DNA of 64,000 nucleotides, taken from contig NW_025765237.1 of NCBI RefSeq assembly GCF_003918875.1, positions 806,001 through 870,000 of the forward strand. The letters run 5' to 3'. This DNA comes from Haliotis rubra. Lineage: Eukaryota. Below, in pieces: positions 1,056-26,476 of this stretch (position 1 is the stretch's first letter; every line of letters begins with the position of its first letter). Made by a program: the position numbers and the translations under genes. The notes below the pieces were generated by a model that worked only from the letters and a program-made list of their open reading frames with translations, was not told the origin of the DNA and did no database searches.

Positions 1056-3952
1056 TTACGGTGGGCATCCTTCCCTTCCCTGCATGTCATACATGACGTA
1101 AGAGGACCCAGCAGTTGGAGGGAGAGCTGTGAGACTGACAGATGACTCCATGCCAGCACCACCAGCCAACTGAACCCTTGAGTCGATCACTGAGCTGTCG
1201 ATGGTGATGAGTCCCCCTCCCGACGTGCTGGACAGAGGCATTTCTGCTGTGCCTCCTAACTGTGTGAGTGTGTGGCTCTTACTGGGGTCAGGACCTGGAG
1301 GATGGATGCCACCAGACAAATGACACAAGGGTTCAGTCATTGGGCTCTGTGTGGACAGGTGGCCTAGAGGATCCACTACCACATGTTCCTCAGATGATCG
1401 GTTTATTGGAAGGATTGGCTCTTTGGCTGTTTGTGGCAGCTGCTGAGTCAGTATGTGTTTTTCACCTGACCGTGGCAGTGGATGACTGATAGTGTGTTCA
1501 CAATGGCCTAACACGTGTGTCACTCTTTCTTCAGCTGAGTGTATGAGATGTTCCTCGACTGGCATGTTGGAGGATCGACCAGCTTCCATCTCAGCTGCCA
1601 AGATGGTTCCTGTTCCTGTAGTGCTGACAGTCACATGCTTGGAAGCATTGTTACCTGTCGCGTCAAAACGCGATCCCTTCGAACACTGAGTGCGCCTTGT
1701 GTGCCTCTGCAGGTCATGTGATGTGTAGAAACGTTTGTAACAGATAGTACACTGGTGGGTTTTCATTTTAATGTCGTGGCGCTTGGAATGTTCTGCCAAG
1801 GCCTCAGATGTGGTGTAAGCCTTCCCACATGTTTCACATCCGAACGGTCGCTCCCCAGTGTGCAGCCCCATGTGCAGAACAAGGTCATTGCTGTTAGCAA
1901 AACCTTGCCCACAAATGTAGCAGTTCTCCTTCCTTGCCTTACAGTGCTTCTTCTGGTGAAGCTTCAGGTATGCAGGATCTGCAAAATGTTCTCCGCAGGT
2001 TCTGCACTGAATCAGCCCTTCACCTGTGTGGCTCTTCATGTGGATCTTCAGGTACCGCGGATCTCGGTAACTCTTTCCACAGATGCTACACTGGTGTCTC
2101 TCGTAGCCTGTGTGCATCTTCATGTGGCTCTTGAGGTATTTTGGAGCTGGACACTTCTTGCCACAGAATTCACACACCAAAGGGTTCTCCGTGTTGTGTA
2201 TCTGCATGTGTTTCTTCAGCGTCTTTTTGGCAGCAAACTCCTTCTGACAGACGTGACACTGAAACGGCTTCACTGAACTGTGCAGAAGCAGGTGATCCTT
2301 CAGGGTGGATGACGTGATGAACTTGTTGCCACACACTTCACAGGAGAATCTCTTCTCCCCTGTGTGCTTACTACGATGTACATCTAGAAGTTTCTGTGTG
2401 AAAAAAGCCTTGGAACAAAAACTGCACTTGAATTCTTTCTCCTTTGTATGTTGTCGCTTGTGTTTGTTGAGATGGGGACGGGAAGCGAAGTGAAGGTGAC
2501 AGTATGGACAGGCAAAGGGGCGTATTCCTTTGTGGATTCGAATATGCGTCTCCAAATTTGTTTTGGTCATAAAAGCTTTGTCACACATGCTACACATAAA
2601 TGACTTTTCTTTAGTCAGATGTCTCTTCTTGTGTGCACGGAGTCCACCTGTTGAGGTGAAGGTCATGCCACAAGTATCACACTGAAATGGACGTTCTCCC
2701 GTGTGGGTGCGGATGTGGTACTTGAGGGCAGGTGCCAGACTGAATGCCCTGTCACAGATATCACATTTGAATGCCTTCGCATGACGATATTTGTGGGTCT
2801 TCCAATTTGTTCTTGTCTTAAACCCCAGACCACACACATCACAGACAAAGGGCCTGGCGTCAGTGCGAGGCCTTATGCTGCCGCAGATTGGATGCATGTT
2901 TAAAAACTTTCTCACAGACCAGACACTTATACTGCTTTGCACAGGCACATCTCTTCTCACTGCCACATGTGTCACAAACCTTCTGACTCGTAACCTTCAG
3001 CTCATCCTCAGGGGACACAGCTTTATGCTTTGCTTTTCTTTCATTTTTGACACGACTTCTGGTCACAGGTTTTTTAACAATAATTCTTTTAGTTTTTGAT
3101 TTCTTATTTAATACTTGTGGATTGTCTGTATCAGACACAATGTCTGCCTGTTCCCAGGGTGGATCATTAGACTCAAGTGTCTCTCCTGAGAGTGATGTCC
3201 CTCTTTCCACATCCTCTAAAGCTTTTGTAGAACAACTTTCTGGCTCTTTCAGTGCTTTCAAAGCTAAGACATACTTCTCTCGTGGTCGACAAGATCGACG
3301 GGGGTCTCCCTGTATTGGTGTTGAACACCTCATTGTTCTTGACGCTGTCCATTGATAAATCAGATGTTTTTGTTTTCTTCTGCTGATCATCATCAGCTGC
3401 CTTATCACTTTCTTCATCCATGTGTGTGTCAAACTGTTCAAACGTTTCATCTATTTCATCATCACTACATTCCTCCTCCTCTTCCTCATCATCATCATCA
3501 TCACTCCCTGTCACAGACTCAGCAGGGTCAACGCTGGCTTGTTTTGGCTCAGCAGTGTTTTTCAGAACTGCACAATCAGATTCACTTTTATCTGGAAAGT
3601 CAGTAACCTCCACTCCAGTACCACAAGCACAGTTCTCATCCACTGATGTCAAATTGATACGGATCAGTGTCTCCTTTTTCTCCAGCCTCTCCCCACACCT
3701 GTCACAGCCGTCTGCTTCATTTGAGCAGACGGACTCTGCAACAACTTGAGTACATGTCACAACCCCCTGGACGAACTTGCTGAACATCTGCCCATCACCA
3801 TCATCCTCTCCCATTACAAGCTTCAGATTTAGGTCGAGAGTCCGATCCTGTACAACAGCGTGTGTGAAGGAGCACTGAAGGATGGTTGTAATCAGGCTCT
3901 GCTTCACACCCTCTCGCCTCGCTGGTTCCTTCATCTTCCCTGACTGACTCAT
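1056..3952 (-). CDS. ZNF-A: C2H2 poly-zinc-finger protein (~15 fingers) with the shared N-terminal domain and an acidic linker
   Basis: Joins ORFs 3173-3964, 2860-3450 and 1056-2975 through an extra base in the G5 run at 3300-3304 and a missing AC at ~2862 (KASH|TDARPF). TGERPF linkers; first ATG (MSQSGK) at 3952; acceptor ttcatttcttgcag at 4247-4260. Confidence 0.88.
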
Positions 3953-4304
3953 CTTCACCCACACAGCTCTCTAAGGACTGTCATCACAGCTGCCAGAAGG
4001 AAATATGGAGTCGTATAGCTTCACAAGGAAAGCTTGAGTCTAACAGATCCCCAATCACAGCTTCACAAGGGCAGCCTGGGCCACAAAGCCTCACAGTCAT
4101 AGATTCGAAAAGACATCTTCACAGATCAAGATGACAGCTTCATGGAGAGACCTTCATCCTGACACTATAAGGTGTTGCTGCCCCTGTGCTGTAGTGATCT
4201 TGTAGCCTGGATGGACTTCATGGGGCCCATTCCTTGGTCTTCTGTACTGCAAGAAATGAAAACGACAGTTTAGTGAAAGACTGAGTGATGCTCAAAGCCA
4301 AAGT

Positions 4305-4625
4305 TAGTGAGTGAGTGAGGGGGTGAGTTAAGATTTATAATCACATCGACAATACTTCAGCCATATTGTGACTAAAACAAGTTGTACACCCATAATATAT
4401 AAAGTTGTATTGTAAAATCTGTCAACTACAGACACTAAAACAACTAGATTACCACAAATACAGAAGAAAAGCTAGTTTGTAACATTAAAATTATACCATT
4501 ATTCAGGACAATACAAACTAAATACAGACATAGATCACCAGCAACTGAAGGTAGATCACCATACTCTAGACCATGGGGACATACAATACAGCTGCTACCT
4601 GCATCTACCCCAAGTGCTTGATATT
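4305..4625 (-). mobile_element. 5'-truncated retroelement 3' end with (ACTC)n tail, probably a LINE 3'UTR
   Basis: Homologous to 33110-33410 (ggtgatctaccttcagt...tctagttgtttta...ctgaa.tattg.cgatgtga.tataaat..taactcac); ends in the tail used by the local SINEs. Confidence 0.6.
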
Positions 4626-5269
4626 AGGAGAACCGATCTCAGCTTTCTTGTTACAAAGGCACACAATGAACCATATATATTTTGGACTACAACATACACT
4701 TATATGGTTAGCAGCAAAATATGTACATTGTATCTTGTATATATGTGTGTGCATGTATATGTGTAAGTACATATGTTTGCATATATATGCATATATGCGT
4801 ATTTATATGAATTCACACTAGTGTGGCAAACTATAACTGAGTGGGGAATAAAGATATATAGAAGAAGAAAAACAGAGTCTGATCACACAATCCATTCAGA
4901 TGCCTTCAACATGATAGCATGGGATCTTATTGACCTGAGTGCCGTTGTACAAAACAACCTCTGCGCTAAGGCTATCATAAGTCTATGTTAAGATATGGGA
5001 GTTACTGTCACCTTAGCACAAAGATCGCTTTGTGCCATCCTAGTCTACCCCAAATTCCTACAAGGGTGCCCCTTTCCAGTGTCACCTGCTGTGATATGGC
5101 TGGAATATTGATAAAACCTTACTTATTCACTCACTCACCCCTACAATCGCATGAAGGGAGATTCAGCTTATAGTATTGTTTGTTTTCTTTAAAACTCCAC
5201 TCTTTACACAAGGATACACACTTCAAGTTGACATATTAAACAAACCTATGCAACTGCTTTATGCCTCAA

Positions 5270-8200
5270 CTAGGTGGGAGACCGCCCCTGAAGATTCAGC
5301 TTGTAGTATGCATTAGTGAGCATCTGGTCCGTGTCACCCATCAGGGCGTTCAGGGCATTCTCCAAACTGGAGTTGGGGTCGAGGGAGTCGATGTGGATGG
5401 GAGAGGAGATGCTGGCCATGTCCAGCAGCATGTCTTCTGCCTCCCCTTTCACCTGTTCTGTATCACTGGTGTCACTCTCACTCTTGTGTCCTTCATTCAT
5501 GTGACCTTCACTGGCCTGTGCACTGAGCTGAGTTTCATTGGCTTGTACACCGACCTGATCATTGTATCCCTGTGCAATGACCTGACCATCCTTGGCTTGC
5601 ACATTGACCTGAACTTCATTGGCTTGTACACTGACCTGATTGTTGAGCTCCTGTTCACTGTCCTGACCTGTGCGTACCTTGGCAATGACCTGCCCTTCAT
5701 TGCCTCGTACATTGACCTGACATTCATTGGCTTGTACATTGACCTGACATTCATTGGCTTGTACATTGACCTGATCCATGTGTCCCTGTGCATTGACCTG
5801 ATCCTCATGTCCCTGGGCAGTACACTGACTTCCACTGTCTTGCACACAGATCAGATTATTGTCTCCAGGTACATTGACATGAGCTTTGCTGGCCTTTGTG
5901 TAGACCAGACTATCACTGGCCTGTACATTCATGCCATCTCCTTGAGCCATGAAATGTTTATCAGCACTTGCTTCACCTTGGAGAATATTGCTGGACTCCT
6001 GAAGTGGATTATTTCCCCTGACTGCCCCTTAACACCACCCTTGTCACTGGCCTTCACACTGACAAAAGTGTTCCTGCTGAACTTTCCAGTGATCCTTTCA
6101 AGGTCACAGTCCTCAATGACCTGGGTTTCAGGATTCTCTTCCTGTTCTTCTGTTGGTAGTGAAATATTTTGAATGTCCACTGAAAGATTCTGATGTCTGG
6201 GTACTTTTGGGGTTACTGGTCCTGCCTCACTCAATTCTTGTGCTTTCACTTGAAGCATGTTGGCATCACTATTTTCAAGGTCATACTTGAATTTATCTGG
6301 TAACTGAACTCTACTCTTGACCTTATTGTGTGTTTTCATATGTTTCCGCAAATCACTTGCACATACATAACCCTTGGAGCAAATATCACATTTATGTGTT
6401 TTCAAGCTGTCGTCATGTCGACGGGCATGTTCAGACAAAGCATCAGCCTTCATGAAGCCTTTGCCACACACCTGGCACTCATGTGGACGTTCTCCAGAAT
6501 GAACTCCACGATGAAACCTCAGATCCCTCTGGTTGACAAACTCCCTGCCACACTCCTCACACTGCACAGTCTTCCTCCGGCAGAACCTCTTCTTGTGGAC
6601 CTTCAGGTAAGATGGGTCGGCAAAGTTCTCAGAGCAGAGATCACACTTCAAGAGCCCCTCGCCGGTGTGAGATTTCATGTGGATCTTCAGATAGGCAGCT
6701 TCTCGGTAGGACTTTCCACACACTTCGCACCGATGCTTCTCATACCCGATGTGAGTCTTCCTGTGGGACTGGAGGTAGTTGTTGGTCGGGAAGGTCTTGC
6801 CACAGACCTCACACACAAGAGGGTTCACTGTGTTGTGGATCCTTGAGTGTTTCTGAAGTTGCCCAAAGGAAGCAAAGTCTTTCTTGCAGCATTCACACTT
6901 GAATGGTTTCACATCACAGTGCAGTAGGACATGCTTCTTCAGAGATGCCTTGACAGTGAATGAGCTTCCACATTCATCACATTTGAACTTCTTATCCCCT
7001 GTATGCTTGGTACGGTGGTACTCTAGATCTTTGGCTGATATGAAAGCTTTAGGACACAGGTCACATGTGTGCCGTTTCCCACCTAAGTGGAGCTTCATGT
7101 GCTTGTGGAGGTGGAGCTTTGACAGGAATGGCTTGCCACACAAACCACAAGTGAAAGGTCGATTTCCTGTGTGGACAGTCAGATGAGCCTGCAGCTGTGT
7201 CCTCATGAGGAAGCACCTGCCACACAGGTCACACTTGAATGTGTCAGCCTTGTGCTGTATGTTGTGAGTGGCAGCCATGTTGGTCTTCCCAGCAGCGTCA
7301 CTTCCCTGCACTCCATCACTGTTCCTCATATGAAGTTCTACAGCATGGGAATCATCAAAAGAAGGCTGCTCACAGCTCTCACATTTCATACCATCATGCA
7401 CAGATTTCATATGTCTTGTCAACTGCAGTTTTGTCTTAAATACAATATCACACACACTACAAGAGAAGTTGTCTGATTTAATATTAGAGTTCATATTTTC
7501 AGGATTCTCTGTCCCTTTCCTTCCATGTGTTGGTGGCAAACTTCTGGGGTATTTTGATCTGCTTAAAGATTGGTCCGTCAAGGAGCATAATGCAGTCATA
7601 TCAGAGTCATCAGTCTTTCTTGTCTGTCTCTTTCTTCCACCGCGCCTGAGACAACCACTCACACTAGTATGTTTATCTTGTATTAAATTGGTCAGGGTTT
7701 CAGCGGACTCTGAAGCACTATTTTGATTTCCTGTATCTGAACATTGACACTTGCTACCTGATCCAGTAGATGAAAACTTCTTCCTGTCTCCATCAGCAGT
7801 CTTATTCACAGGTGCTTGCTTCATGCAAGTATAGCCCTGCAGTTGATCAGCATCTCTAGGGTCATCATTCACCACCTCACCACAGACTGTACAAGAGGGT
7901 TTACCAGTCTGAATGTCTCCAGTGAGTTCAACCTTGTCACCAGAGACTGCACAAGAGTGTCTATGTTCATCAGCTTTGGTGTCTCCAGTGTCTACAACCT
8001 TATCAACAGAGACTGCACATGATCGACCATGTTTATCAGCCTGAGTGTCTCCAGTGTCTACAGCCTTGTCACCCAAGACTGTACAAGAGTGTCCATGTTC
8101 ATCAGCCTGAGCTGTCTCCAGTATCTACAGCCTTGTCACCCAAGACTGTACAAGAGTGTCCATGTTCATCAGCCTGAGCGTCTCCAGTATCTACAGCCTT

Positions 8201-8938
8201 GTCACCCAAGACTGTACAAGAGTGTCCATGTTTATCAGCCTGAGTGTCTCCAGTATCTACAGCCTTGTCACCCAAGACTGTACAAGAGTGTCCATGTTCA
8301 TCAGCCTGAGTGTATCTTGTGTCTACAGCCTTGTCACCCAAGACTGTACAAGAGTGTCTATGTCTATCAGCCTGAGTGTCTCCAGTATCTACAGCTTTGT
8401 CACCCAAGACTGTACATGATCGTCTATGTTCATCAGCCTGAGTGTCTCCTGTGTCTACACCCTTGTCACCCAAGACTGTACAAGAGTGTCTATGTCTATC
8501 AGCCTGAGTGTCTCCAGTATCTACAGCTTTGTCACCCAAGACTGTACATGATCGTCTATGTTCATCAGCCTGAGTGTCTCCAGTATCTACAGCCTTGTCA
8601 CCCAAGACTGTACAAGAGCACCTGTTAACAGATGTCACCACAATGTGAAAGGCGGTCTGTCGACCCTTCTGGCCACATTCTGGACAGTCATCAACCACCT
8701 CAGACCTTGAGTCAGACAGGCAGGTCACTGTGCCATTTACAAATTCTTCATAAAGCGGATTCTCACAACCTTCAGATTCAAACATCAGTCTCATTTCTAA
8801 AACTCCGAGCAAAAAACTAATGTTGGAAACAGAGCACTGAAGACTTGATTTGTTAATGTCCTTAACGACTCCAACACCTCTCTTCATGTGTGATCTGGAT
8901 GCCTGTGCCATCTTCTCTTTCTTTGACCATGCCACCAT
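5270..8938 (-). CDS. ZNF-B: C2H2 poly-zinc-finger protein (~12 fingers) with the shared N-terminal domain and 22-aa and 9-aa repeats
   Basis: Joins ORFs 8102-8938, 5929-8076 and 5270-5950 through an extra C at ~8112 in a repeat unit and a probable missing base near the C4 run at 6015-6018; acceptor tttcctattctttcag at 9135-9150. Confidence 0.88.
5500..5830 (-). repeat. Coding 27-bp minisatellite (QVNVQANEC-type 9-aa units, ~12 diverged copies)
   Basis: Visible in the 226-aa ORF: QVNAQGHMD QVNVQANEC QVNVQANEC QVNVRGNEG ... Confidence 0.85.
7880..8618 (-). repeat. Coding 66-bp minisatellite (SCTVLGDKAVDTGDTQADEHGH, ~11 copies)
   Basis: cccaagactg recurs with period 66 (e.g. 8271, 8337). Confidence 0.95.
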
Positions 8939-9707
8939 GAACTCAAAGGCCTAAGTGTTCCTGTTCAGTTCCAGAGGTTCCACAGAATTGACTGGGAATT
9001 CTTTATTCCAGCTTGATGAGCAATAACAAATGACAGTCACTCACTTTGATTTTCTCAATACCACCTGAAGATCACTGACCAATTTCCTCTCAGTGCTGGT
9101 ACCCATCAAGTGGTGATATCCATACCAGTATGCACTGAAAGAATAGGAAACGGCCTTGAAAGTGTTGCTCCAAACAATACTCATATGACTGTTAAATATA
9201 TTTAAACTTTTAATGGGTGGCCCTTACTAATGTCTGCACAGGAGTATTGAGTCAAGCCTATTACCATCATTAACAAGTCTTCAAATGATGATAAACAAAC
9301 AAAATATCTATCGTTTGATCTTTAAATATTTATTTTTTTGTTTCATAGTGTATCATTTCCAAAAGGCATGTTTTGAGGTGGTTTTCTGTTTTTTTTCTCC
9401 TTTGAATTGTGGGGCAAAGGGAGGATTGGGTGTGGGTGTGAGGGTGAAAGGTGAAACCTCACAAGATACCCATTATAAGAACCTCATATGGTATTCAAAC
9501 ACCATGAAATTTATTATCACATCCCTTCAAAGGAGGAGACAATATTGTTATTTGATCTAGAAATTTACATGATAATGATCAAAATGTAGCTTTAAGTCAG
9601 TGTTATATTCACTGAGATCAGGTAGACACTGGCCATGTGACTTACATCTATTAATTTCAATTAGAACAGTGCTAAAGGTTTTTTTTAAGATTAATGTATC
9701 ACTTTAA

Positions 9708-9940
9708 CCGGGGTTAGAATTAGTTTTCAGCAACACATCCTTGTCAAAAGAGGCGACTAACGGGATCGGGTGGTCAGGCTCGCTGACTTGGTTGACACAT
9801 GTCATCGTATCCCAATTGCGAGGATCGATGCTGATGCTGTTTATATCTAGATTATCTGCTCCAGACTCGATTATTTACAGACCACCACCATATTGCTGGA
9901 ATATTGCTGAGTGCGGCATTAAACAACAAAACCAACCAAC
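9708..9940 (+). mobile_element. SINE family B copy, slightly 5'-truncated
   Basis: gggttagaat...aagaggcgactaacgggatcgggtggtcaggctcgctgac...gctggaatattgctgagtgcggc. Confidence 0.85.
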
Positions 9941-10450
9941 CAAATGTGATAAAACAATCAAGCACTCAGAAAACATAAAACAGTCTTCTCACATGGGAAC
10001 ATCAAGTAGTATGAACCTGATCTAGTCTTCACCTACTGGTTCATTTTGTGTGCGATTCAACAAATAACATTCACATTTGTAACTTTTTCACACATTAGAT
10101 TTATACATGGCTTAGTGGTTATGTTGAAAACTGAACCAATATAGTCAACATGTAGGTAATGACATCATCACAAACCACACCTTATGCAATACGACTTTAT
10201 TATGTTACTTGCATATAATAAGTGAAGCATTACATTATCACCTATTGTGCTTGATACGAGTTTTATCAACTCTGTAATGTTGACCCACATGAATAACACA
10301 CAATTCACGTAGACAAACTCAAGAAGGCCAAAACAATACCTACATTGATCTGGGTGTACACCATTGTTCACACTGCCAACATACACAGCTTAACGTTTCA
10401 TGGAGATAATCGGACATGTAATTCTTGACACACTTGACATATGTGAATCA

Positions 10451-14708: not shown

Positions 14709-17700
14709 TCAGGAATTGTCCTGCATCTCACACATGGCATAATGTTGTCCGTCATACACAATCTGACCCTGGTCATTCACCATCATGGCGGAGTGGTCCC
14801 CCCTTGACAGCATCATGTCTGCCTGGTGTATACTGGACAGGCTGCTGGAGTACAGACCACCGTCATGGCCGCCTACAGAGGACGTCATGCTGGGATCCAC
14901 CGGCTTCAGGTGGGAGGGAGGTTCGTTGTAGTCCCCATCTGTTCTGAAGGTGGTTGCAGTTGACTGAAGGTTTGTTTGAACATGAGAGAACTGACCAGTA
15001 TTGTGATCTGAGGGTACATGTGACATGTATCCTGTATGAGCTGAGGGTGCATGTGATATATATCCCGTATCATGAGCTGAGGGTGCATGCAATAAATGTC
15101 CTGTATCATGAGCTGAGGGTGCATGTGATATATGCCCTGTATCATGAGCTGAGGGTGCATGTGATATATGCCCTGTATCATGAGCTGTGGGTGCATGTGA
15201 TAAATGCCCTGTATCATGAGCTGTGGGTGCATGTGATAAATGCCCTGTATCATGAGCTGAGGGTGCATGTGATAAATGCCCTGTATCATGAGCTGCATGG
15301 TGCATGTGATAAATGCCCTGTATCATGAGCTGAGGGTGCATGTGATAAATGCCCTGTATCATGAGCTGTGGGTGCATGTGATAAATGCCCTGTATCATGA
15401 GCTGAGGGTGCATGTGATAAATGCCCTGTATCATGAGCTGCGGGTGCATGTGATAAATGCCCTGTATCATGAGCTGAGGGTGCATGTGATAAATGCCCTG
15501 TATCATGAGCTGAGGGTGCATGTGATAAATGCCCTGTATCATGAGCTGAGGGTGCATGTGATATATGCCCTGTATCATGAGCTGAGGGTGCATGTGATAT
15601 ATGTCCTGTATCTTGAACAGATGGTGCATGTGATATATGCCCTGTATTATAGTCAGTGGTCTCAGTAAAGGCGGAAGGTCTCCCATCAGCTATAGTGCTC
15701 TGTGCCATGGGTCTTGCATCACCAGATAACTGCTGCTCTGCTGTTGTGCTCGGCTCCAAGTCACTGTCACATGGCTCCCAATCTGGCTCTGTCTGTGGCA
15801 TGTCAATATCTCTGTTGCCTGGTTTCAGATTATCAGGAAGTGTTGCTCGAAGCTTGACTTTTCCATGTCGGACTTCATGTTTCCGCAATTCGTTTGTATT
15901 AATGAAGGGTTTGCTGCACACTTTGCATCGGACACAGTTCTCCAGAGTGTGCCGTTTCACATGTTCTGATAAAGCTTCAGGCTTAGCAAAACCCTTGCCA
16001 CAGGTTTCACAGCCAAACGGTCTTTCACCTGTATGAATGCCCATGTGGCTTGTGAGGTCACGGTTGGTGGGGAATCCCCGGCCACACACACTGCAGTACT
16101 CCAGCCTCCCCTTACAGTACTTCCGCTGATGCAGCTTGAAGTAGGAGGGATCGATGAACCAGTCACCGCACGAGTGACACTGGATCAGGTTCTCCCCTGT
16201 GTGGGTCTTCCTGTGGATCTGCAGGTACCATGCACTGCGGTAACTCTTCCCACACTGGTCGCACTTGTGCTGCTTGTAACCCTTGTGGGTGATGTCATGG
16301 GAACGGAGATTGCTTGCTGTGAGAAACCGTTTGCCGCACAACTCACAGATAAACTTCTTGTCATCACTGTGTATCTTCATGTGACAGCGGTACTGCAGTT
16401 CCGTCACACACTCTTTGTCACAAACATCACACTTGAACGGCTTCAACTCACTGTGGAGAAGTATATGCTTCTTCAGGGAGCTCCCCATTGTGAACGTCTT
16501 GTCACACATAGTACAGCTAAAGGGTTTGTCACCTGTGTGGACACGGCGATGAACACTCAAATCTCTTAAATCAAAGAACGCCTTCGGACAGGAGTCACAT
16601 TTATGTGACCGAACCCCTGTATGGAGCCTTGCATGTCTCTTTAAGTGAGAATTGGTCAAACAACCTTTCCCACATACAGTACAGGTGAAAGGTCGGTGCC
16701 CTGTGTGAATGCCCTGATGGCTTCTCAAGGACATCTTGGATGAGAATGTCTTGTCACATGAATCACACTTAAACTTCTGCTTACTGTGGCACTTCCTGTG
16801 ATTGCGCAGGGCTGAGGAATCTGTGTACGTCTTCCCACAAGTGTCACACTGATAGGGTCGCTCACCAGTATGGACACGAGTGTGAACCCTCAGAGAGGAT
16901 GCATCCGAAAAAGATTTTCCACATGTGTCACATTTGAACTCCTTGGAAGCCTTATGAGTTTTCATGTGTCTTGTTAAATGTTGCACACTCTGAAAGGAAG
17001 AACCACAGACAGAACACACAGAGGTAAGTTCTGAAGAATGAGTTTTTTCATGTTTTTTCAGCATTTCCAAAGATTTGAAGCGTTTGTCACATAGATCACA
17101 TCTGGCATATTTACATCCACTATGACACTTCTCACCCTTTCCAGTCAGTTTTGACTTATCTTTGCCACATGTTTTACATTTATAAGATTTTCCTCCCAAG
17201 GACTTGGCCTTTCCTTTCCTCTCCCCTACAGTGTTTACCCTCCTCCTCCCACCCCCATGACGTCCCATGCTGGCACCAGCAGCTCCTCCAACCCCTTCTC
17301 GGTCTTCAACATCATCAACAACATCACCATCACCACTGGCTACATAATCCAACATGCTTTCACTGTCTGACATACTCTCAAAATCTTTATATATCATTTT
17401 AGTCCTAGATCTCCTTGGCCTTTCAGATAAACTAGTTCTTACAGTTATAAGGTCATTTTCAGTTGCTTCATGTCCAGGAGTAAATGCTTCTTCAGGAAAG
17501 ATGTCTTTGGGAGGTGCATGACCTTCACCTTTGCCCTTCAACTGCGTGTCCATAGGAATGACCATCTCAGACTTGTCACAGCTCTCGAGGTCGGCACATG
17601 ATCTACTGGTCAAGTTTCCATGGTCATGACAGATGTTACATTCAGACTTAAAATCAGAAGCAATCAGCGTGAAACTAATTACAGTGTCTTGCTTCTGCAT

Positions 17701-17988
17701 CTGTTCTCCACAATCACAATTCTCATACACCTCGACTGGCAGAATCTTTGTAGAGACATCACTGCACTTGACTTCTCCATGAATGAATGCACTGAAGATG
17801 TGTCTGTTGGAGTCAGTCACTCCGGGCTCGACCTTCAAGCTGACCTCTAATGCAGCATCCGACACAGTGGCCTGGACAAACGAACACTGCAGAAGAGCCA
17901 AACATGTTTCTTCTTGACTTGTCACAGGCTTGTCCTTCACCTTGGTTCTATCCTTTGGCTGGCCTCGTTTTCGTCGACTCTTGGGCAT
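14709..17988 (-). CDS. ZNF-C: C2H2 poly-zinc-finger protein (15 fingers) with the shared N-terminal domain and a His-rich repeat tail
   Basis: 900-aa ORF 15286-17988 continues into 14709-15686 through one extra base in a repeat unit at ~15297; acceptor catcttcatccttttgcag at 18673-18691. Confidence 0.92.
15020..15650 (-). repeat. Coding 36-bp minisatellite (HAPSAHDTGHLS, ~17 copies)
   Basis: tgcatgtgataaatgccctgtatcatgagctgaggg repeated in tandem. Confidence 0.95.
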
Positions 17989-18983
17989 GATGAAAGGAGA
18001 GCTGACACAACAACTGGACCACTAGTCTGTCAGCAGTTTTCTCCCAAAGCATTGCAACATCGAAAATGATTTGTTTGATCCTGGCATCTACTCTTGTAAT
18101 AATGTTAATGTGGCATCAGTAAATAATCTCCCCTGTGCAAAATCAGCTCTACCAGAAGATTGTAACATCTGTAACATCATGATCATCAGTTTTTGTCTTG
18201 TGTCTTATTGATGCCAATCACAAATGATGTTTTCCCCTGACACTTTTCATTTTTAGCAATACAGTGAAGATTCCAACGCTGACAAACAAGCATCATGGAC
18301 TGTACAAGTAACCTCAAAAACTTGCACAGAAATGTTTTCATTATATCCGTGAATCAATCTGTTTGTGGATCATGATAACAGTTATCATGAATCCACAGGA
18401 GAAGGTGAGCATATCGATTCAACAAACAACCAGTCTTGAGACCTTACTAAACTGAGAATCTATCACAAATAAGCAGTTCTTCTTTCAATATGTTTCAATA
18501 GAACAATATTGAATATATTCTGTGGTTGCAAAACAAATCCTTGCCAATGCCGACATCTCCATCACACACAGTCCTGATGTACATGCAAGGGTTCTTCTGT
18601 ACACTGACTAAAGACACATAGTCTTCCCCAGCCATGTTCAGTTACCTCCCTTTGCCAGGCTTGTGGTGAAACCTGCAAAAGGATGAAGATGCTGAACATG
18701 CTGAAGGTAAGACAGTGTCCGAAAATAAGCATGAAAGTCAAGAAGCCCCTTGCTGAATGTTAGTTGCCTTAGGGGGGGGTCAATTTTGTCAGATCTAATC
18801 TCAAGAACTCCCATGACAATGATCAGGGGCTTGAAAAAATAGTTCTACTAAAAGTTCTAAATTTAAACATATGTAGGGACTAGCCTTTTATTATGAGGAG
18901 GGGAAGAAGAAGAGGAAGGGGAGGAGGTGGGGGAGAAAATGTTACATAAATGGGCGATGGGTATCAAATTTGATATTAGTCCT

Positions 18984-19350
18984 GCTGAAGGGGTCGTCGG
19001 CACGGGTACTACAGATATGTACCTTGGCCATAATGAGAATACAGAAACGTACCCTAGGACGATTCCATTCCCATTGTGTCGTATTCTTGACTGGAACTGT
19101 AATACTGTTGTATTAGATACATTTGATTGTGTTATGTAAGTAATGAGAATACACAGTAACGGATATTTCGCGATGCACTTGAATACCACTCGGAATCAGT
19201 TGAACGGGAACAACTACATATATACGGTTTCGGTTTTTGATTGCGGAATATGGACTCGTCCGCCTTTAAGGGTACCGGGTACGTTTCTGTATTTTGACTT
19301 TGTTTAGGGTACATATCTGTAGTACCTGTGCCGACAACGACCCCTTCAGC
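18984..19350. mobile_element. Mutator-like MITE
   Basis: ~70-bp imperfect TIRs (gctgaaggggtcgt...acgaccccttcagc) and 9-bp TSD attagtcct (18975-18983 / 19351-19359). Confidence 0.88.
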
Positions 19351-19712
19351 ATTAGTCCTGAGACCAACCAGGAGGTACGAGCTCGACGAACGGAAGGGGC
19401 ACGTGAGATCAGTGGGGTGAGACCCACGGTGGGCAGTAGGAGATCATTAGCTCTGTAAACTGCATTCTGGATTCTGGCCTATTAAGTACAATGGCATTCA
19501 ACATCAGTGTTTTGTTTCTGATCCTAGATTCACTGCAGCAACTATGATCGACTCGTCAGTGTGGTTTTGTCTGTGTAGACTATTCTCGTCCGCTATTGCC
19601 TCTGCAATAAACAGTAAAATAATAAAAACAGGAAAGTATTCAATTACCCGCATTGATGATTGTGTTCCTCTTTCCTTGGCGCATAATAAAGAATTCGTTA
19701 GAAATTAAACAA

Positions 19713-19800
19713 ACATACATTTCTTGGAGTTTGTTGGCAATGGCTGCTATTAATTCAAGGGAGATAATACTTGAAAGCTGAATTTGATACCGCTATGGAA
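19713..19800 (-). promoter_or_regulatory. Candidate first non-coding exon and promoter of the minus-strand ZNF array
   Basis: Donor-like AAAT|GTATGT at 19713-19718, motif AAGGGAGATAA at 19757-19767, locally CpG-retaining sequence. Confidence 0.4.
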
Positions 19801-21329
19801 ATGTTTATTCGATCGCCTACACTTTCGATGATTTTTATATCTTTTCGAGGTTTGAGATCTTCATTCCTCCTGTGCAGTGTCCGAAAAAGCCACTGGTCCG
19901 CTAGCCCGTGGCTAATAAATATCTAGTCGGGCCAGTAAATCTCCAGTCACTGGCTCGACTGGCTAGTGAATTTTCATGGGGTGATTTTATAAATACACCG
20001 CTCTCTCCGACTAGTTAAGTTATAATACACTTTTAAATCATGCAATTTTGTACACACGTACTAGGGGGGTCAGCAATTTTGTACAATAACATATGTTTAA
20101 AATTATACTTAGAAATTATGGGAAGGGGTCACTGATTTTGTACATGACATGAGGCAAAACTTGGAAACTATTTCGCACACTGCACCTGTACAAGGATGAA
20201 TCAATTCGATGAGTATATCCTGGGATAATCTACAACAGTCTCCCTGGTATATCTTATGAGTATTCACGTCAGACAAAGTTTTGACAACACAACATAGATT
20301 TGCTTTCAATCGAGCATCACTATTTAAATGATTTTGGGATGTGTGGATGTATTATACAAATTCAATGTGCTGTAATGCCAGGAAAGGTAAGACACTTTGT
20401 GGATGACAACTTCTTATTATATTATGATGTGGCGTCTCGATATAGATTCCGTTGTGTAATAAGGAATGATGTACTGCAGCAAAGAACATTGAGTGAGTGA
20501 GTTTAGCTTTTGCGTATTAATGTGATTACGCTTTGTCGTCGAGTTCACGTTCATGTTCTTTTCTGGAGCATCTCTCCATTCCGTCATGTATAGACCTGTT
20601 CGCCACCATAGCTTGCATTTGGTCCCTATTCGAATCTCACGACTCTACAAAAATCCTCCCATAAAGTATACGTTATTGGTGTTTGTTTACAGTTTGAAAC
20701 TGCATATTATTTGGCACTCTTCCAAAATGATGTGTTTACCATCCTCACCGGATAAAAATAGTTCTGCCTACTGTCGTTTTTAATCGCTGAGGTGAGAAGT
20801 GAAGTGAGGTGACACGGGGATAATATTGTACGTGTGTGTGCGTGTGCGTGTGCGCGTGTGCTATGAGATAATGGTATTTTGGTCGTTTTGACGGTAATCA
20901 CCCTAAAGTTGACCAGTTAGGTCCAGTGAGCTGTGGAGATCTATCCGAAGGGGTGTTGAACACGCGTTTGTTCTCCTTTGGTTTGTAGTGGAACTGTCAT
21001 CTTGGCCATGAAGGGGAAAACGACTGAAAGAATTACGCTGCAGTGCATATGGTGCATTTCAGTCTGAGCTGAGCTGAGAGCTCTTTCCAACCCCAAGAGA
21101 CGCCGGGATCCAAGGACTGCAGGCCCCGGCCGGGTCCAGGTTGGATCCTCATGTGGGTTCCGCTTCCTGAAGCCAACGCATAATTACTCATTGTCTTCTC
21201 CGAAAAGTCATTGGAAACGATGCATTCATTCCTACTGGTGTGATTTTTCATATGAACCAAGTAGGGCATGATATTTAACTGTTTTGTCATGGAAGCGTGA
21301 CACGAGTGATGAAAGCTGGAATCTCAAGC

Positions 21330-21442
21330 CAGGGCCTAGATTTTCGAAGCTCTCTTAGCGCTACGACAGTCGTAAGTGCCATACATTAACATTGACTTAT
21401 GACTATCTTAGCGCTAAGAGAGCTTCGAAAATCTAGGCCCTG
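21330..21442. mobile_element. Palindromic MITE, Harbinger-like
   Basis: cagggcctagattttcgaagctctcttagcgct...agcgctaagagagcttcgaaaatctaggccctg is a near-perfect hairpin; relatives at 36094, 32284, 49303 and ~4945. Confidence 0.85.
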
Positions 21443-21829
21443 TATTGTACGTGAGGGTGTCGCTTGCACAGCTCCAATATGTTTCCAGAAAATTCTTTCT
21501 TTTTAACAAATATTTTCATATCATTTTTTATTAAAACAACTCAGTCTTGAATATTATTATAAAGTTACAAAGCTGCGATGCACTTTCAAGACTGTTGTCT
21601 GTTGCGTTTGATCAGGGATAATCTACAGCGTTCTTGGATTTGATCTTTTATTGACTGATAAATGATGTCAGACCTGTCGTTTTGCTGCAATAAATAAGGT
21701 GTAACACAAAAGCACTTCTGTCATAGAAGATTCTAATGGCACAGATTTTAGACTTTGAACATTGACTCAATGCTGATGGGAAGGGCTCCGTCTTGCGAAT
21801 ATTTAGTGGTCTCCATCGGTTAACCCTTC

Positions 21830-22549
21830 CACTGAGTTATCTCCCCTTGACTGGAGTTTTCTCAAGTTCTGTCGTACTGTGAGGGGTTATTGAAAACAAT
21901 GGATACGAAGTAAGGTATGCCTTCAGATATGTCACTTTCCGTCATTAAGCAGATATATATTTATCAACACACAGACTCATATGTGTTAGCATATATCCTG
22001 ATTCACTACACGTGTCCCGATAATTCCTGACATGACCCTATGCCTGTGATGCAGTATTCCGTTTGGTCTGGTAACCAAGCTCAACCAACGGACCGGGCCG
22101 GGAACCAAGTGACTTATTTTCCTCATTGATATCGATTACGTGTGTTACCATACGGAAAGTGTCACACCTTTTATAAATTAGTCAACACTTTTAAAGAACG
22201 TATGCAAAGAATACACCTTCCGTTCCTAAGTTCTATAAATAGGGAATTTAGTATCCTGATTCAAATTGTTTAATCATGGGTGTTTAAACGCACAAATTCC
22301 ATTCCATGGGTAGTGATTTTGCAGGAGATAAGACATTTGTACGTTCTGGACATAAAAATATTCTGTCATAATGTCATTTACAAATTTGGCTAAAGTCACG
22401 TGAACTGGGCGTCGCATTCTGTCCCTAACAATTATCCCGTAATTTACTGCTGGGTTTTCTTGTTTCCTGTTTCCCAGTTGTCATATCGCTCTTATCTTGT
22501 CATGGACACTGAATAGGTCTGTGATGGTTTTTATGTGTACTCGCGTCAG
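21830..22549 (+). promoter_or_regulatory. Candidate promoter and 5' non-coding exons of ZNF-D
   Basis: GAGTTATCTCCCCTT at 21834-21848; donor-like gtaaggtatg at ~21910; internal exon 22478-22549 bounded by tttcccag and cag|gtaagt. Confidence 0.5.
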
Positions 22550-22888
22550 GTAAGTCATGAATAGGATGACGATGTGGATATGATATATTGTTTGATGAAA
22601 ATAAGAAAATTACATGGTTGCAAAACAAGCTTTTTGGGTTCACATTACTGTCTATTTTGCTCACATTCCTTCAAAGTTTTAATTGTTCAATAATACTTTA
22701 GTGGTTTTTGCATCATCAGATCTCTCTATATGTGTTTACCAACAGTTTTTGCAAGGTCTCTATTAAAACAATTCCAAATCATTCATTTTGTACCCATCTC
22801 TTGAGACCTACAGTGTGTAACCAGGTAAAGTCAGGCAGTAGGGGATCAAGTTCCAGGGTTGTAGATTGAGACTTGTCTTAGACCTATT

Positions 22889-22942
22889 CACTCACTCACT
22901 CACTCACTCACTCACTCACTCACTCACTCACTCACTCACTCA
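22889..22942. repeat. (ACTC)n microsatellite
   Basis: About 13 perfect units, the same unit as the local SINE/LINE tails. Confidence 0.95.
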
Positions 22943-23567
22943 TGTTGGGAATTGGTTAAAATCTTATAATTGATGATTGGTCCCTTACAACCGATCAATC
23001 ATCGAAAATAATTGGTTAGCGTCATTTATCAAATGTTCCTGTTGTCTTTGGAAAAAATAAAGATAAAACATGTAGTAATTTGGTTTTTTTTGCAAATTAA
23101 ACGAAATCCATTTGCAAATTTTGCATATTTAAAGGATTATTAGTATGTTAGGAACACAGATTTCATGGATTCTTGAAGATAAATTCAATCATGACTTGGA
23201 ACGAGCTTGTTGTGCCTATGAAATGTAATTATGACACAGACAAAAGCAACCTTGTGAAAAATATTGTTGATGCAAACAAGTGTTCCAAGATTGGTTGCAT
23301 TCGATTATGAGAAAACATGTTCGATTGCTTGGTCGTTTAGTCACTGCGACCAATCTTCGATTATTTCAATTAATCGGACCACCACTATCACTCACAGGCC
23401 AAATTATTCTTGTATGGCAAAATGGCTTTCAGTTTGGCATGTTCTTACACTAATCTACTGTGTTTCTCTTTCCAGATACAATCAAAAGAGGAAGAACATG
23501 TCCTACTATACGCAAACATGACAGTTTATTCTAAATGTGAAGGTCACATACCATCAGCCATTTAAAT

Positions 23568-26476
23568 ATGGATCCAGCCGACGAGGGGAGCAGAATAGTT
23601 GCACTGCGGTGTCACTTTGCTAAAACATATTGTACAGCTGATACCGTGGATCTCCATGTTAAGTTCTCCCCACTGGCAGCAAGTCTCTCGCTTGACAAAC
23701 TGCATGAGAAACTGTTTCTTTGTGAGGATGCAGCACTCAGTGTCTACAACACTGATGTGTATGGAAAGTGTGGAAACAGTGTCACATCACACAGGACAGA
23801 AATCAGATTTAGCATCTTTGCTGAGGAAAGAGCACATGAATGTTCACAATGTGATGATTCGTATGTAGCTTGTGATTCTGGGTCAGGGTCCGACAGAGGT
23901 CAGACAGCAACATTCAAGGACTCCACAGAGAAGGGTGAACCTGCAGATCTGGGACCAGAGTCAGAGATCTCCAAGGTCAAGGTTGTTTCTAAAGATGCTG
24001 TTACGGGACCTATTACCTGTTTAGGTGAAGAACGTGCAGATGATGACTCTGATGGTTGTCCATCCGTTGACAGTAACAGGGATGAATATATTGGGGACCA
24101 AGTCAAGAGCGAGAAGGAGATAAAATGTGATCAGTGCCTTGAGAAGTTTGATTCCGAAATCCAATTGTCGATTCACTCTGTGTTGCATGTGCAGAACCTG
24201 ACGTGTGATGTATGCAGCGAAGTGTTTGACTCGAGGAGCAGTCTCCAGAAGCACATGCGAAGTCACGCAGGGCAGAAGTGTTTCAAATGTGAGCATTGTG
24301 ATAAGAGTTTCTTGGAGAGGAGTGACCTGACAGTCCATGTGAGGGAACATTCGGGGGAGAAGGTCTTCCAGTGTAAGGAGTGCGGGGAAACTGTTCAGTA
24401 GAATCAAAGCACTGAAGCGACACACCCTCAACTATCACAGCAACATTCCTGTTCATATCTGTAAAGTCTGCCGGATGGGGTTCACAGATGAAGAAGACCT
24501 TCGTTCACACATGTTCACAGACCACAAGGGAAACGAGAAGACAAGGTCACTCGACCAGCAGTACAAATGTTCTTTATGCCCGAAAACTTTCATCAAGAGT
24601 TCCCTCCTGAAGAACCATCTCCGCCTGCACCGAAATGGCAAACCCTATCGCTGCATGTACTGTGGTATCACTTTCAAGGATGAGTTGAGCTTCGAGCTGC
24701 ATCAGGAGATACACAAAGGTGAGACAGGCAAACCCTTCACCTGCAAGAACTGTGGACAATGTTTCTCAAGTCTGACCCTTCTGAAACAGCACAAAGCTTC
24801 CCATGATGGTGACATATACAAGTGTGAGATATGTTACAAGATTTTCCAGTCAGGGAAGTCTCTGAAAGATCATCAAAACATCCACAGCGGTATTAAGTCC
24901 TATGTTTGTAAGGTCTGTGGTAAGGCTTTGGTGAGTGCAAACAGATTGAAGAGTCATCTGAAAACTCATATCATTGATAAACCCTACAAATGTGAGTACT
25001 GTCAAAAGAGTTTCATCAACCCAGGTGATCTGACCAATCACAGAAGAGTCCACACCGGCGAGAAGCCTTATCTATGTGAAATCTGTGGCAAGGGTTTTGC
25101 ATACAAGACATCCGTTCCCAAACACATGGTGGTCCACAGTGACCTGAAGCCCTACCAATGTGATTCTTGCCACAAGGTGTTCGCCTCGAACCTCCAGATG
25201 CACAACCACAAGAAGATCCACCTTGGACTAAAGAACTTTATCTGTGAAGTGTGCGGTAAGCGCTTCACAACTGGCAAGGCCCTGAAGGTTCACAAGTTAA
25301 TGCATGAAGGTTACACAGGACACGACTGTGACATATGTGGGAAGAAATATAGAAATGTGTACTATCTTGAAATTCACAAGAAAACCCATACAGGCAAGAA
25401 CCTCCTTCAATGTCACATGTGTGGAGATTCTTTTGCAGATCCAACCTACTTCAAGCTTCATCAGCGAAAGTTCTGCAAGACGATCTTGATATATTGTGAG
25501 TTGTGTAACCGAGGCTTCCCTAACAACAAGGACCTGAAGAGTCATATGGGCTACCACAGCGGTGAACGACCCTACGGCTGTGATGTCTGTGGGGAAGGCT
25601 TTCGCCAAGTCGGTGTTTCTCTCAGACCACATGAAGAGGCATAATCCTGATAATCTCATCAAGTGTTCTGTATGTGGTAAAGGGTTCATCAACAAGAAGG
25701 AGGTCCGCAGACACGAGGCCCGACACAAGAACATTAACAAGAAACGAGCATCACCTCGTATTGCTGTCAGTATTGACCCAAATCAAGTCACAGATCTTCC
25801 TGAATTTGAATCAGGAACTATAGAGTCTAAGACATTAGGATGCAGTCTTCCATCAAGCAGTATTGCAGACAGCCATGATCAGGTTTTACAAGAATATGCT
25901 CAGTCTATAGAAAGTATACGGAAGTCTGTGATTCCAACATCATCAGGGTATGAGATGAGACCAGATGATACTATCCATGCAGGACCGATTCCAGTTGGAA
26001 TCCCTTCAGGGCTTCCTCATGGACCTCCACAGGGACTTCAGCAAGGCCTTCCTTCAGGGCCATCATCGGATCCTGCTCAAGCAGTTCAAGGGCCACCTCC
26101 AGGTGTGGCTCCAGGTCATCCTCCACTGACACCTCAAGGCCAGCCACTGATGCTACCAGCAGCTGACCCAATTCATTATGCTCACATGGACTCCTGTGCA
26201 GGGAAGAAGCCATACACTGTGGAGGGCCTGGACTCACAGCACCAGATTATCAATGACCCAATTCCGCCACACTTGGATTCACGCCACTCCTACTCATCTG
26301 TGTTCACGCGGGAGAGTGGTGAGATGGTTCTGATGCAAGAAGGACTGGCTGCCATCATGGACCAGTCCGTGGAGCGACGAGCTGTGCAAACATTTGCTCC
26401 TCCCCCCATGCAGTACTTCTACCCCTCCCAGCAGAACCGGTACCATGAGGGGGACAGCATGCCCAAGTACTCATAG
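23568..26476 (+). CDS. ZNF-D: C2H2 poly-zinc-finger protein (~19 fingers) with a diverged copy of the shared N-terminal domain and a Pro/Gly/Gln-rich tail
   Basis: Joins ORFs 23568-24401, 24475-25644 and 25562-26476; removing one G from G4 at 24384-24387 and at 25591-25594 restores CGKLFSRIKALKRH and CGKAFAKSVFLSDH; acceptor tttctctttccag at 23475. Confidence 0.9.

What the first reader, a model, noticed from the sequence alone, without database searches (positions are those of the whole stretch)
3623..23852. Unrecognised ~80-90 aa N-terminal domain shared by four clustered zinc-finger paralogues: candidate lineage-specific effector domain (KRAB/ZAD analogue)
Seen: the N-termini align although the linkers behind them do not. 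ZNF-A 3623-3880 LQCSFTHAVVQDRTLDLNLKL..FSKFVQGVVTC..CDRCGE..ETLIRINLTS..CAC; ZNF-B 8612-8842 LQCSVSNISFLLGVLEMRLMF..YEEFVNGTVTC..CPECGQ..QTAFHIVVTS..CSC; ZNF-C 17629-17892 LQCSFVQATVSDAALEVSLKV..FSAFIHGEVKC..CDCGE..DTVISFTLIA..CNIC; ZNF-D 23604-23852 LRCHFAKTYCTADTVDLHVKF..LFLC..KCGN..RTEIRFSIFA..CSQC. The pattern is LxCxF, an alternating-hydrophobic strand, FxxFxxGxVxC, (Cxx)CG, T plus a second strand, then Cx1-2C. Established: expanded poly-C2H2 families carry clade-specific N-terminal modules (KRAB and SCAN in tetrapods, ZAD in insects, BTB), and this pattern matches none that I recognise. Inference: a beta-rich, probably Zn-binding dimerisation or cofactor-recruiting domain that defines an undescribed ZNF family, possibly acting on transposons in this repeat-dense genome.
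Basis: partly seen in the sequence, partly recalled or inferred. Interest (0 to 1): 0.9.

Follow-up and report, generated by a model that had tools for sequence, protein, structure and literature searches.

The report
Abalone-only N-terminal module of clustered zinc-finger genes
Five neighbouring abalone zinc-finger transcription-factor genes share a real, conserved ~90-residue N-terminal module found only in the genus Haliotis, but it marks one small conserved gene cluster, not a KRAB-like expanded family, and its second half looks like a zinc finger that lost its histidines.

Summary
The window is Haliotis rubra. The four N-termini are significantly alike, while the linkers behind them are not. 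A fifth paralogue, F, lies 5.8 kb left of the window.

The module matches no Pfam family: no ZAD, KRAB, SCAN, BTB or THAP. Profile comparison with ZAD is nil. Two AlphaFold models (pLDDT 68-69; two beta-hairpins and a helix) have no structural neighbour.

An exhaustive HMM search of 1.84 billion proteins found it only in Haliotis. That profile missed F, so its reach is short.

Between H. rubra and H. asinina, dN/dS is 0.21-0.34 in the module, 0.49-0.72 in the linkers and 0.01-0.25 in the finger arrays. The module is constrained. The fingers are too conserved for a transposon arms race.

New here: the module's second half (CxxCG, 23 residues, CxxC) aligns in register with a C2H2 finger plus the next finger's Cys knuckle, with both histidines replaced. 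This is suggestive, not proven.

The frame breaks in gene A are assembly indels. RNA contigs cover gene A.

Best reading: a genus-restricted composite module, partly finger-derived, probably zinc-stabilised and used for protein-protein contacts. The KRAB/ZAD analogy is only partly supported. Interest is modest.

The parts
3608..3898 (-). N-terminal module of ZNF-A
   Evidence: HMM hit E 2.6e-34, profile 2-95. Covered by RNA contigs at 3516-3793.
1056..3952 (-). ZNF-A coding region: a single exon holding module, acidic linker, 14-15 fingers and tail
   Evidence: The three ORF pieces align end to end with one 961-aa ORF of H. asinina. Short-read DNA contigs of the same species show -1 nt at 3300 and +GT behind 2862, exactly at the two frame switches, so these are assembly indels.
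3987..3991 (-). Splice acceptor just upstream of the ZNF-A start codon
   Evidence: Polypyrimidine tract plus AG at 3991-3990. RNA contigs of two runs join 3986 to 6262, inside ZNF-B's last-finger region. All three frames are closed between this acceptor and the ATG at 3952.
8594..8863 (-). N-terminal module of ZNF-B
   Evidence: HMM hit E 1.7e-28.
5270..8938 (-). ZNF-B coding region (module, repeat linker, about 12 fingers, repeat tail)
   Evidence: The pieces align to one 1063-aa ORF of H. asinina. DNA contigs show +T behind 6011.
7905..8618 (-). 66-bp tandem repeat (10.8 copies) forming ZNF-B's linker; it starts at the last Cys pair of the module
   Evidence: Tandem Repeats Finder and translation. 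It is far less repeated in H. asinina.
17617..17913 (-). N-terminal module of ZNF-C
   Evidence: HMM hit E 1.2e-35. Modelled by AF2.
14709..17988 (-). ZNF-C coding region: the intact 900-aa ORF 15286-17988, plus a tail continuing through the 36-bp repeat
   Evidence: ORF list. 88.6% identical to the H. asinina ORF. The tail is as in public model P0002.
23586..23864 (+). N-terminal module of ZNF-D, the most divergent; it lacks the first Cys of the CxxC knuckle
   Evidence: HMM hit E 1.5e-29 and alignment.
23568..26476 (+). ZNF-D coding region in three ORF pieces
   Evidence: ORFs. The break near 24385 is a 1-nt shift inside an otherwise regular finger. Not checked with reads. No orthologue was seen in the 10 kb upstream of C' in H. 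asinina.
38600..41283 (-). ZNF-E, a neighbouring poly-C2H2 gene without the module (context)
   Evidence: Translations. No HMM hit anywhere else in the window in six frames.

Best explanation
The module is about 90 residues long and sits at the N-terminus of five tandem, single-exon poly-C2H2 genes of abalone. Their order is F(+), A(-), B(-), C(-), D(+), with F just left of the window.

The five genes are whole-gene duplicates. Their finger arrays match position by position.

The module is composite:
- The first ~55 residues are predicted as a beta-hairpin plus a short helix and have no detectable relative.
- The last ~45 residues (CxxC-G, 23 residues, Cx1-2C) most likely descend from a C2H2 finger plus the Cys knuckle of the following finger. 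Both histidines are replaced by hydrophobic or small residues.

The retained cysteines, together with the invariant Cys of LxC, probably hold one zinc ion in a new site.

The module can no longer be a DNA-reading finger. It is kept under purifying selection while the adjacent linkers drift. It therefore most likely serves protein-protein contacts: self-association, pairing among the cluster's paralogues, or cofactor binding.

Shown: homology among the five modules, constraint, restriction to Haliotis in what was searched, absence of known effector domains, and transcription of gene A.

Inferred: finger ancestry of the second half, zinc binding, and the interaction function.
For: Similarity among modules:
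- Shuffle z up to 24.6.
- Fifth paralogue F joined by hhalign at prob 97%, E 6.6e-11 over 92 columns.

Constraint:
- dN/dS in the module is 0.21, 0.23, 0.34 and 0.27, against 0.49-0.72 in the linkers.
- Pooled Nd:Sd is 42:42 in the module against 182:82 in the linkers, Fisher p 0.0025.

Invariant C10, C66-G67 and C90, and near-invariant C63, in 10 sequences.

No known domain:
- Pfam gives nothing at E<=10 for A-D, and only sub-threshold zinc-ribbon hits for F.
- Profile comparison with ZAD gives prob 0.05%.
- No fold neighbour; best Z is 2.5 and TM is below 0.45.

Distribution: only Haliotis in 1.84e9 representative proteins and in the F-based search.

Finger-like second half:
- hhalign against 35 finger pairs gives P 1e-5, prob 49-82%.
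- 0 of 150 column shuffles reach the observed score, even with the Cys/Gly columns fixed.
- Lineages D, F and A-D alone each align in the same register.
- The PDB profile search returns almost only tandem C2H2 proteins, with ZNF568 at E 2.9e-8.

Both AF2 models agree on a hairpin, helix, hairpin layout. RNA contigs cover gene A, including part of its module.
Against: - Each single finger match is only 9-12 bits (i-Evalue 1-12). The good PDB E-values are sums over repeats.
- The four-sequence profile found no PDB hit, and Pfam zf-C2H2 does not match.
- AF2 predicts strands, not a finger helix, after the CxxCG. The models are of middling confidence (pLDDT 68-69, pTM 0.40-0.46).
- In those models the CxxC hairpin tip is far from the terminal Cys pair, so the zinc site is unresolved.
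- D lacks one knuckle Cys, and F lacks the 'VxC' Cys.
- The module's dN/dS is only modestly below that of the C-terminal tails (0.31-0.57).
- No experiment or multimer model bears on dimerisation.
- The first HMM missed paralogue F, so 'Haliotis only' may reflect limited reach and few annotated vetigastropod genomes.
Confidence: 0.5

Rival explanations
1. The whole module is a new fold with no ancestry in C2H2 fingers. The CxxC-23-CxxC spacing and a few flanking residues resemble tandem fingers only by convergence, as in any small zinc ribbon.
For: - No Pfam zf-C2H2 hit.
- Per-repeat scores are insignificant.
- The A-D profile alone gives hhalign prob 18% and no PDB hit.
- AF2 predicts a long beta-hairpin there.
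- F has sub-threshold zinc-ribbon hits.
Against: - The same register is recovered independently from D alone (P 7e-6), F alone (1.3e-4) and A-D (1.4e-3).
- The score exceeds all 150 shuffles that keep the Cys/Gly columns fixed, so non-Cys positions contribute.
- The host proteins are themselves finger arrays, an obvious source of the sequence.
Confidence: 0.28
2. The region has no function of its own. It is a decaying remnant of ancestral N-terminal sequence, perhaps dead fingers, that still aligns only because it decays more slowly than the low-complexity linkers.
For: - dN/dS of 0.21-0.34 is far above the working fingers (0.01-0.06) and close to the C-terminal tails (0.31-0.57).
- Cys ligands are incomplete in D and variable in F.
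- AF2 confidence is modest.
Against: - The paralogues are old. Module identity is 17-30%, and all of A, B, C and F have orthologues in H. asinina. Yet three Cys, a Gly and several Leu are invariant, while the linkers kept no similarity at all.
- The module's Nd:Sd is significantly lower than the linkers'.
Confidence: 0.15
3. It is a highly diverged member of a known ZNF-associated domain such as ZAD or THAP.
For: - Same position and size as ZAD.
- Language-model features of F's module put ZAD clusters among the nearest named hits, but at a score of only 0.62. THAP appears at 0.69 for C.
Against: - No Pfam hit at E<=10.
- hhalign against six ZADs gives prob 0.05%.
- The Cys pattern differs: a single Cys at the N-terminus, and both knuckles in the C-terminal half, 23 residues apart.
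- No C-terminal helix is predicted.
- No structural match.
Confidence: 0.04

Closest known systems
ZAD (zf-AD, PF07776) of arthropod poly-C2H2 proteins
   Same: An N-terminal, ~80-90-residue, Cys-containing module placed ahead of a long linker and a C2H2 array, in tandemly clustered genes. A zinc-stabilised interaction role is plausible.
   Different: - No sequence or profile similarity.
- ZAD has CxxC at its very start and a second CxxC ~45 residues later, followed by a dimerising helix. Here there is a single N-terminal Cys, both knuckles are 23 residues apart in the C-terminal half, and no helix is predicted.
- ZAD families have tens to hundreds of members; this one has five.
Degenerate (histidine-less) C2H2 zinc fingers
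   Same: The second half keeps CxxC-G, hydrophobic residues near the finger-core positions, an acidic 'linker' and the next Cys knuckle at finger spacing minus one. It aligns in register with tandem fingers.
   Different: - Both His ligands are gone in every paralogue.
- The predicted secondary structure is strand, not helix.
- It is fused to an unrelated ~55-residue N-terminal part.
- It sits 145-220 residues away from the working array and is conserved as a unit.
KRAB, SCAN, BTB and FiNZ effector/oligomerisation domains of vertebrate ZNF families
   Same: Lineage-restricted N-terminal modules attached to C2H2 arrays.
   Different: - No Pfam match.
- Those families are large, and KRAB and FiNZ arrays evolve fast with transposons (Wells et al. 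2023, PMC10547256).
- Here the arrays are nearly frozen between species and the family has five genes.

Membership tests
ZAD (zf-AD, PF07776) | Match to the Pfam model or to a ZAD profile | tested here: not met
   No hit at E<=10 for any of 10 module sequences. hhalign against six Pfam-verified ZADs gives prob 0.05%, E 0.83.
ZAD (zf-AD, PF07776) | Two invariant CxxC pairs, the first at the start of the domain, about 45 residues apart, followed by a helix | tested here: not met
   Alignments A4 and A5 show one Cys at the start and knuckles 23 residues apart near the end. AF2 predicts no terminal helix.
ZAD (zf-AD, PF07776) | N-terminal position in poly-C2H2 proteins | tested here: met
   ORFs with an in-frame stop just upstream of the ATG. 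Module, linker and fingers lie in one ORF.
ZAD (zf-AD, PF07776) | Homodimerisation | not testable with these tools
   No multimer prediction or experiment is available.
KRAB / SCAN / BTB / THAP / FLYWCH | Match to the Pfam model | tested here: not met
   hmmscan of Pfam-A at E<=10 gives none of these.
Expanded effector-domain ZNF family (KRAB-ZNF-like) | Many genes per genome carrying the domain | tested here: not met
   An exhaustive HMM search of 1.84e9 representatives found only this cluster's products in H. rubra and H. asinina. A fifth member was found by other means. There are no further copies in 64 kb plus three loci in six frames. Caveat: the first profile missed F.
Expanded effector-domain ZNF family (KRAB-ZNF-like) | Fast-evolving finger arrays | tested here: not met
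   dN/dS of the arrays is 0.04 (C), 0.01 (A), 0.06 (F) and 0.25 (B) between H. rubra and H. asinina.
C2H2 zinc finger (second half of the module) | Cys knuckle CxxC at a hairpin turn | tested here: met
   CxxC in A, B and F; CxC in C; a single Cys in D. AF2 puts it at a hairpin tip.
C2H2 zinc finger (second half of the module) | Two His ligands 13 and 17 residues after the second Cys | tested here: not met
   F/I/V and A/S/V occupy those positions in all paralogues.
C2H2 zinc finger (second half of the module) | Significant profile similarity in register | tested here: inconclusive
   hhalign gives P 1e-5, prob 49-82%. Shuffle controls reach the score 0 times in 150. Subsets give the same register. 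PDB hits are almost only tandem fingers, but each repeat scores just 9-12 bits. There is no Pfam zf-C2H2 hit.

The most novel reading that the evidence does not exclude
A genus- or family-restricted zinc-finger-associated domain caught close to its birth. Two adjacent C2H2 fingers lost their histidines. Their orphan Cys knuckles were then re-wired, together with a new beta-hairpin/helix segment, into a single new zinc site that now serves as a dimerisation or cofactor-docking module. This would be a worked example of how ZAD-like N-terminal modules can arise from the finger array itself.
Probability: 0.15. Interest if true: 0.6.

Novelty: new variant of a known kind. Interest (0 to 1): 0.32.

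Why it matters
Outside vertebrates and insects, almost nothing is known about what poly-C2H2 proteins carry besides their fingers. A conserved, apparently abalone-only N-terminal module would add a mollusc case. If the finger ancestry holds, it also suggests one way such modules originate.

The reach is limited. The module sits in five genes of one cluster, those genes have unusually conserved DNA-binding arrays, and nothing ties them to transposon control.

There is also a practical point. Public gene models of both abalone species fuse these neighbours into 1982- and 2903-residue proteins, which hides the module's N-terminal position. The H. rubra assembly also carries indels that break three of the four genes.

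Tried and rejected
- Pfam scans of the four and then ten modules gave no known domain.
- The word-indexed protein search with C's module found nothing. With F's module it found Haliotis only.
- A finger-based search for orthologues outside Haliotis returned only generic poly-ZNFs at 41% identity or less. This search is what turned up paralogue F.
- The PDB sequence search with the four-sequence profile found nothing.
- Foldseek against PDB, AFDB clusters and the ESM atlas, plus a VIA-align wide search, were run on two models. None gave a match: best Z was 2.5, and TM was below 0.45 by the model.
- An oyster protein (K1PPU6) appeared twice at E 0.2-0.3. It could not be fetched and was not pursued.
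- ESM-atlas feature searches gave arthropod hypotheticals at 0.85 and ZAD clusters at 0.62. These are leads only, and hhalign contradicts the ZAD lead.
- The first half of the module compared with fingers gave prob 0.1%, so the 'three relic fingers' idea was dropped. It had been prompted by the 56-residue spacing of the invariant Cys in F; that spacing is 53-59 in the other paralogues.
- A weak HMM hit upstream of F (L002 9886-10140) is spurious on inspection.
- Earlier notes of this scan held nothing on the module, by sequence or by words.


Full report
**What is there.** The window is from Haliotis rubra. Exact look-up of the proteins hit by the module profile gives XP_046558324.1 of H. rubra and XP_067664182.1 of H. 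asinina.

Five poly-C2H2 genes lie in the window:
- A (minus strand, 1056-3952)
- B (minus, 5270-8938)
- C (minus, 14709-17988, with an intact 900-aa ORF at 15286-17988)
- D (plus, 23568-26476)
- E (minus, 38600-41283)

E does not.

**Check of the observation.** Smith-Waterman scores of the four segments against 2000 shuffles give z 24.6 (A-C), 11.4 (A-B), 8.1 (C-D), 5.6 (B-C) and 3.7 (A-D). B-D shows no pairwise signal. All four score E 1e-28 to 1e-40 against joint profiles.

On intact sequences the modules align (z 3.1-17.4) and the linkers do not (z -1.7 to 2.5).

Each module follows an ATG by 15-35 residues, and an in-frame stop lies 4-11 codons upstream of that ATG.

**Gene integrity and structure.** In H. 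asinina (locus L001) the orthologues of C, B and A are each one uninterrupted ORF of 1100, 1063 and 961 codons, stop to stop. Module, linker, fingers and tail are all in that one ORF.

In the window, A is in three frames and B in two. The switch points in A are at about 3301-3309 and 2863. They coincide with differences in short-read DNA contigs of the same species: one base fewer at 3300, and GT added behind 2862. A further T is added behind 6011 in B. These breaks are therefore assembly indels.

The break in D near 24385 is a 1-nt shift inside a regular finger. It is probably the same kind of error, but it was not checked with reads.

RNA contigs of a close relative cover gene A from 1019 to 3793, including part of the module.

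**A fifth member.** A finger-based search turned up a 747-aa H. rubra protein (P0038), with orthologues in H. asinina and H. cracherodii. It lies 5.8 kb left of the window start.

Its N-terminus carries the same module: hhalign against the A-D profile gives prob 97.1%, E 6.6e-11 over 92 columns.

The exhaustive HMM search had missed it at E<=0.001. That shows the four-sequence profile has a short reach.

**Distribution.** That HMM search covered 1.84 billion representative proteins. Its only true hits were products of this cluster in H. rubra and H. asinina. The fifth hit is a bacterial repeat protein at E 2e-4.

A search with F's module found only the three Haliotis orthologues. In the finger-based search, no non-Haliotis protein exceeded 41% identity over C's last fingers, while the Haliotis paralogue F reached 63-64%.

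Six-frame searches of the window and three loci found no further copy. So there are five genes per genome, and the module is known only from Haliotis. The caveat is limited sensitivity and the few annotated relatives.

**Known domains.**
- Pfam-A at E<=10 gives nothing for A-D. For F it gives only sub-threshold zinc-ribbon-type hits.
- hhalign against six Pfam-verified ZADs gives prob 0.05%.
- Two AlphaFold2 models were made: C with 4 sequences, and F with 10. pLDDT is 68 and 69, and pTM is 0.46 and 0.40.
- Both models agree on hairpin, short helix, hairpin, with the CxxC at the tip of the second hairpin.
- Foldseek on PDB, AFDB clusters and the ESM atlas, and a VIA-align wide search, give no neighbour. 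The best Z is 2.5 and TM is under 0.45 by the model.
- With models of this quality, the lack of a match says little about whether the fold is new.

**Selection.** Nei-Gojobori estimates between H. rubra and H. asinina:

| Region | C | A | B | F |
|---|---|---|---|---|
| Module | 0.21 | 0.23 | 0.34 | 0.27 |
| Linker | 0.72 | 0.70 and 0.25 (two parts) | 0.58-0.67 | 0.49 |
| Finger array | 0.04 | 0.01 | 0.25 | 0.06 |
| C-terminal tail | 0.31 | 0.57 | 0.42 | 0.34 |

Pooled Nd:Sd is 42:42 in the module against 182:82 in the linkers (Fisher p 0.0025), and against 74:189 in the fingers (p 0.0003).

The module is thus constrained more than the linkers but much less than the fingers. The near-frozen finger arrays argue against a transposon arms race.

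**A partial identity.** With the 10-sequence profile, the PDB sequence search returned almost only tandem C2H2 proteins: ZNF568 at E 2.9e-8, Aart at 4e-5, then ZBTB17, Ikaros and others. In every case profile positions about 54-98 lie on 'linker, CxxC-G, helix, linker, next CxxC'.

Each repeat contributes only 9-12 bits, so the E-values are sums over repeats.

Further tests of the same point:
- hhalign of the module against 35 finger pairs from these same proteins gives P 1e-5, prob 49% (global) to 82% (local), over 42 columns.
- The observed score is 28.0. It exceeds all 150 full column shuffles (mean 8.4). It also exceeds all 150 shuffles that keep the Cys and Gly columns in place (mean 14.7, sd 3.1).
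- The same register comes out of D alone (P 7e-6), F alone (1.3e-4) and A-D together (1.4e-3).
- The two histidine positions hold F/I/V and A/S/V.
- The distance to the next Cys pair is one residue short of canonical in C, D and F.
- The first 58 columns show no finger similarity (prob 0.1%).

I read this as suggestive evidence, about even odds, that the second half is a histidine-less relic of a finger plus the next finger's knuckle.

**Mechanism.** Without its histidines the unit cannot be a DNA-reading finger.

Invariant C10, C66 and C90, with near-invariant C63 and the second Cys of the last pair, make one zinc site plausible. Which residues form it is open:
- The AF2 hairpin puts the CxxC tip far from the last pair.
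- D lacks C63.
- F lacks the 'VxC' Cys.

Given its position, its constraint and the analogy with ZAD, a zinc-stabilised protein-protein interaction role is the most likely function. This could be self-association, pairing among paralogues, or cofactor docking. It is inference only.

**Transcript structure (side result).** RNA contigs of two runs join window 3986 to 6262. 3986 is three bases from a canonical acceptor at 3991-3990. 6262 lies inside B's last-finger coding region. The exact splice sites are unresolved, and the bases flanking the reported skip are not GT..AG.

All three frames are closed between the acceptor and A's ATG, so this form cannot make a B-A fusion protein.

The public models fuse neighbours instead: C+B+A in H. 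asinina (2903 aa), and E plus intervening sequence plus C in H. rubra (1982 aa).

**Verdict.** The module is new as a described entity and, so far, abalone-only. It is not a KRAB/ZAD-type hallmark of an expanded, transposon-chasing family, and part of it is probably a derived zinc finger. Interest is modest.

Noticed in passing
window 2862, 3300, 6011, about 24385, 25562-25644: The H. rubra assembly carries small indels that break ZNF-A (two) and ZNF-B (at least one). Short-read contigs of the same species correct the first three. ZNF-D has a 1-nt shift inside a finger and an overlap of two frames, neither checked with reads.
   Followed up: partly
window 3986 to 6262 (minus strand): RNA contigs from two runs of a close relative splice from inside ZNF-B's last-finger coding region to the acceptor just upstream of ZNF-A's ATG. 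Neighbouring ZNF genes are therefore linked in some transcripts. The exact donor is unresolved.
   Followed up: partly
L002 10001-12244 (5.8 kb left of window position 1): This is a fifth paralogue with the same module (XlCOF6-like, 747 aa, plus strand), intact in three Haliotis species.
   Followed up: yes
public models P0001 (H. asinina, 2903 aa) and P0002 (H. rubra, 1982 aa): RefSeq gene models merge neighbouring ZNF genes. P0002 also includes translated antisense or intergenic stretches of window 26000-35300. These merges hide the module's N-terminal position.
   Followed up: partly
window 7905-8618; 15036-15647; 5502-5808: Coding minisatellites: a 66-bp unit x10.8 in B's linker, starting at the module's last Cys pair; a 36-bp unit x17 in C's tail (HAPSAHDTGHLS); and a 27-bp unit in B's tail. 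Copy numbers differ from H. asinina.
   Followed up: partly
window 1056-1100 and 14709-14760 (C-terminal ends of A and C): A and C end with a similar short motif (Y-x-M-x-E/D-M-Q), a possible conserved C-terminal peptide. It was not tested.
   Followed up: no
window 51721-53213 (+): ORFs with a LisH/CTLH-like N-terminus resembling WDR47/nemitin. This is my recollection of the family and was not searched.
   Followed up: no
window 58056-59753: A long tandem array that gives open frames on both strands (repeated VLVYTYLSWCIHTCPGVYIP-type units). It is probably a non-coding minisatellite.
   Followed up: no
L001 1-9200 (H. asinina, upstream of C'): No orthologue of ZNF-D lies where H. rubra has it, 5.6 kb from C. 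D may be lineage-specific, moved or lost in H. asinina.
   Followed up: no
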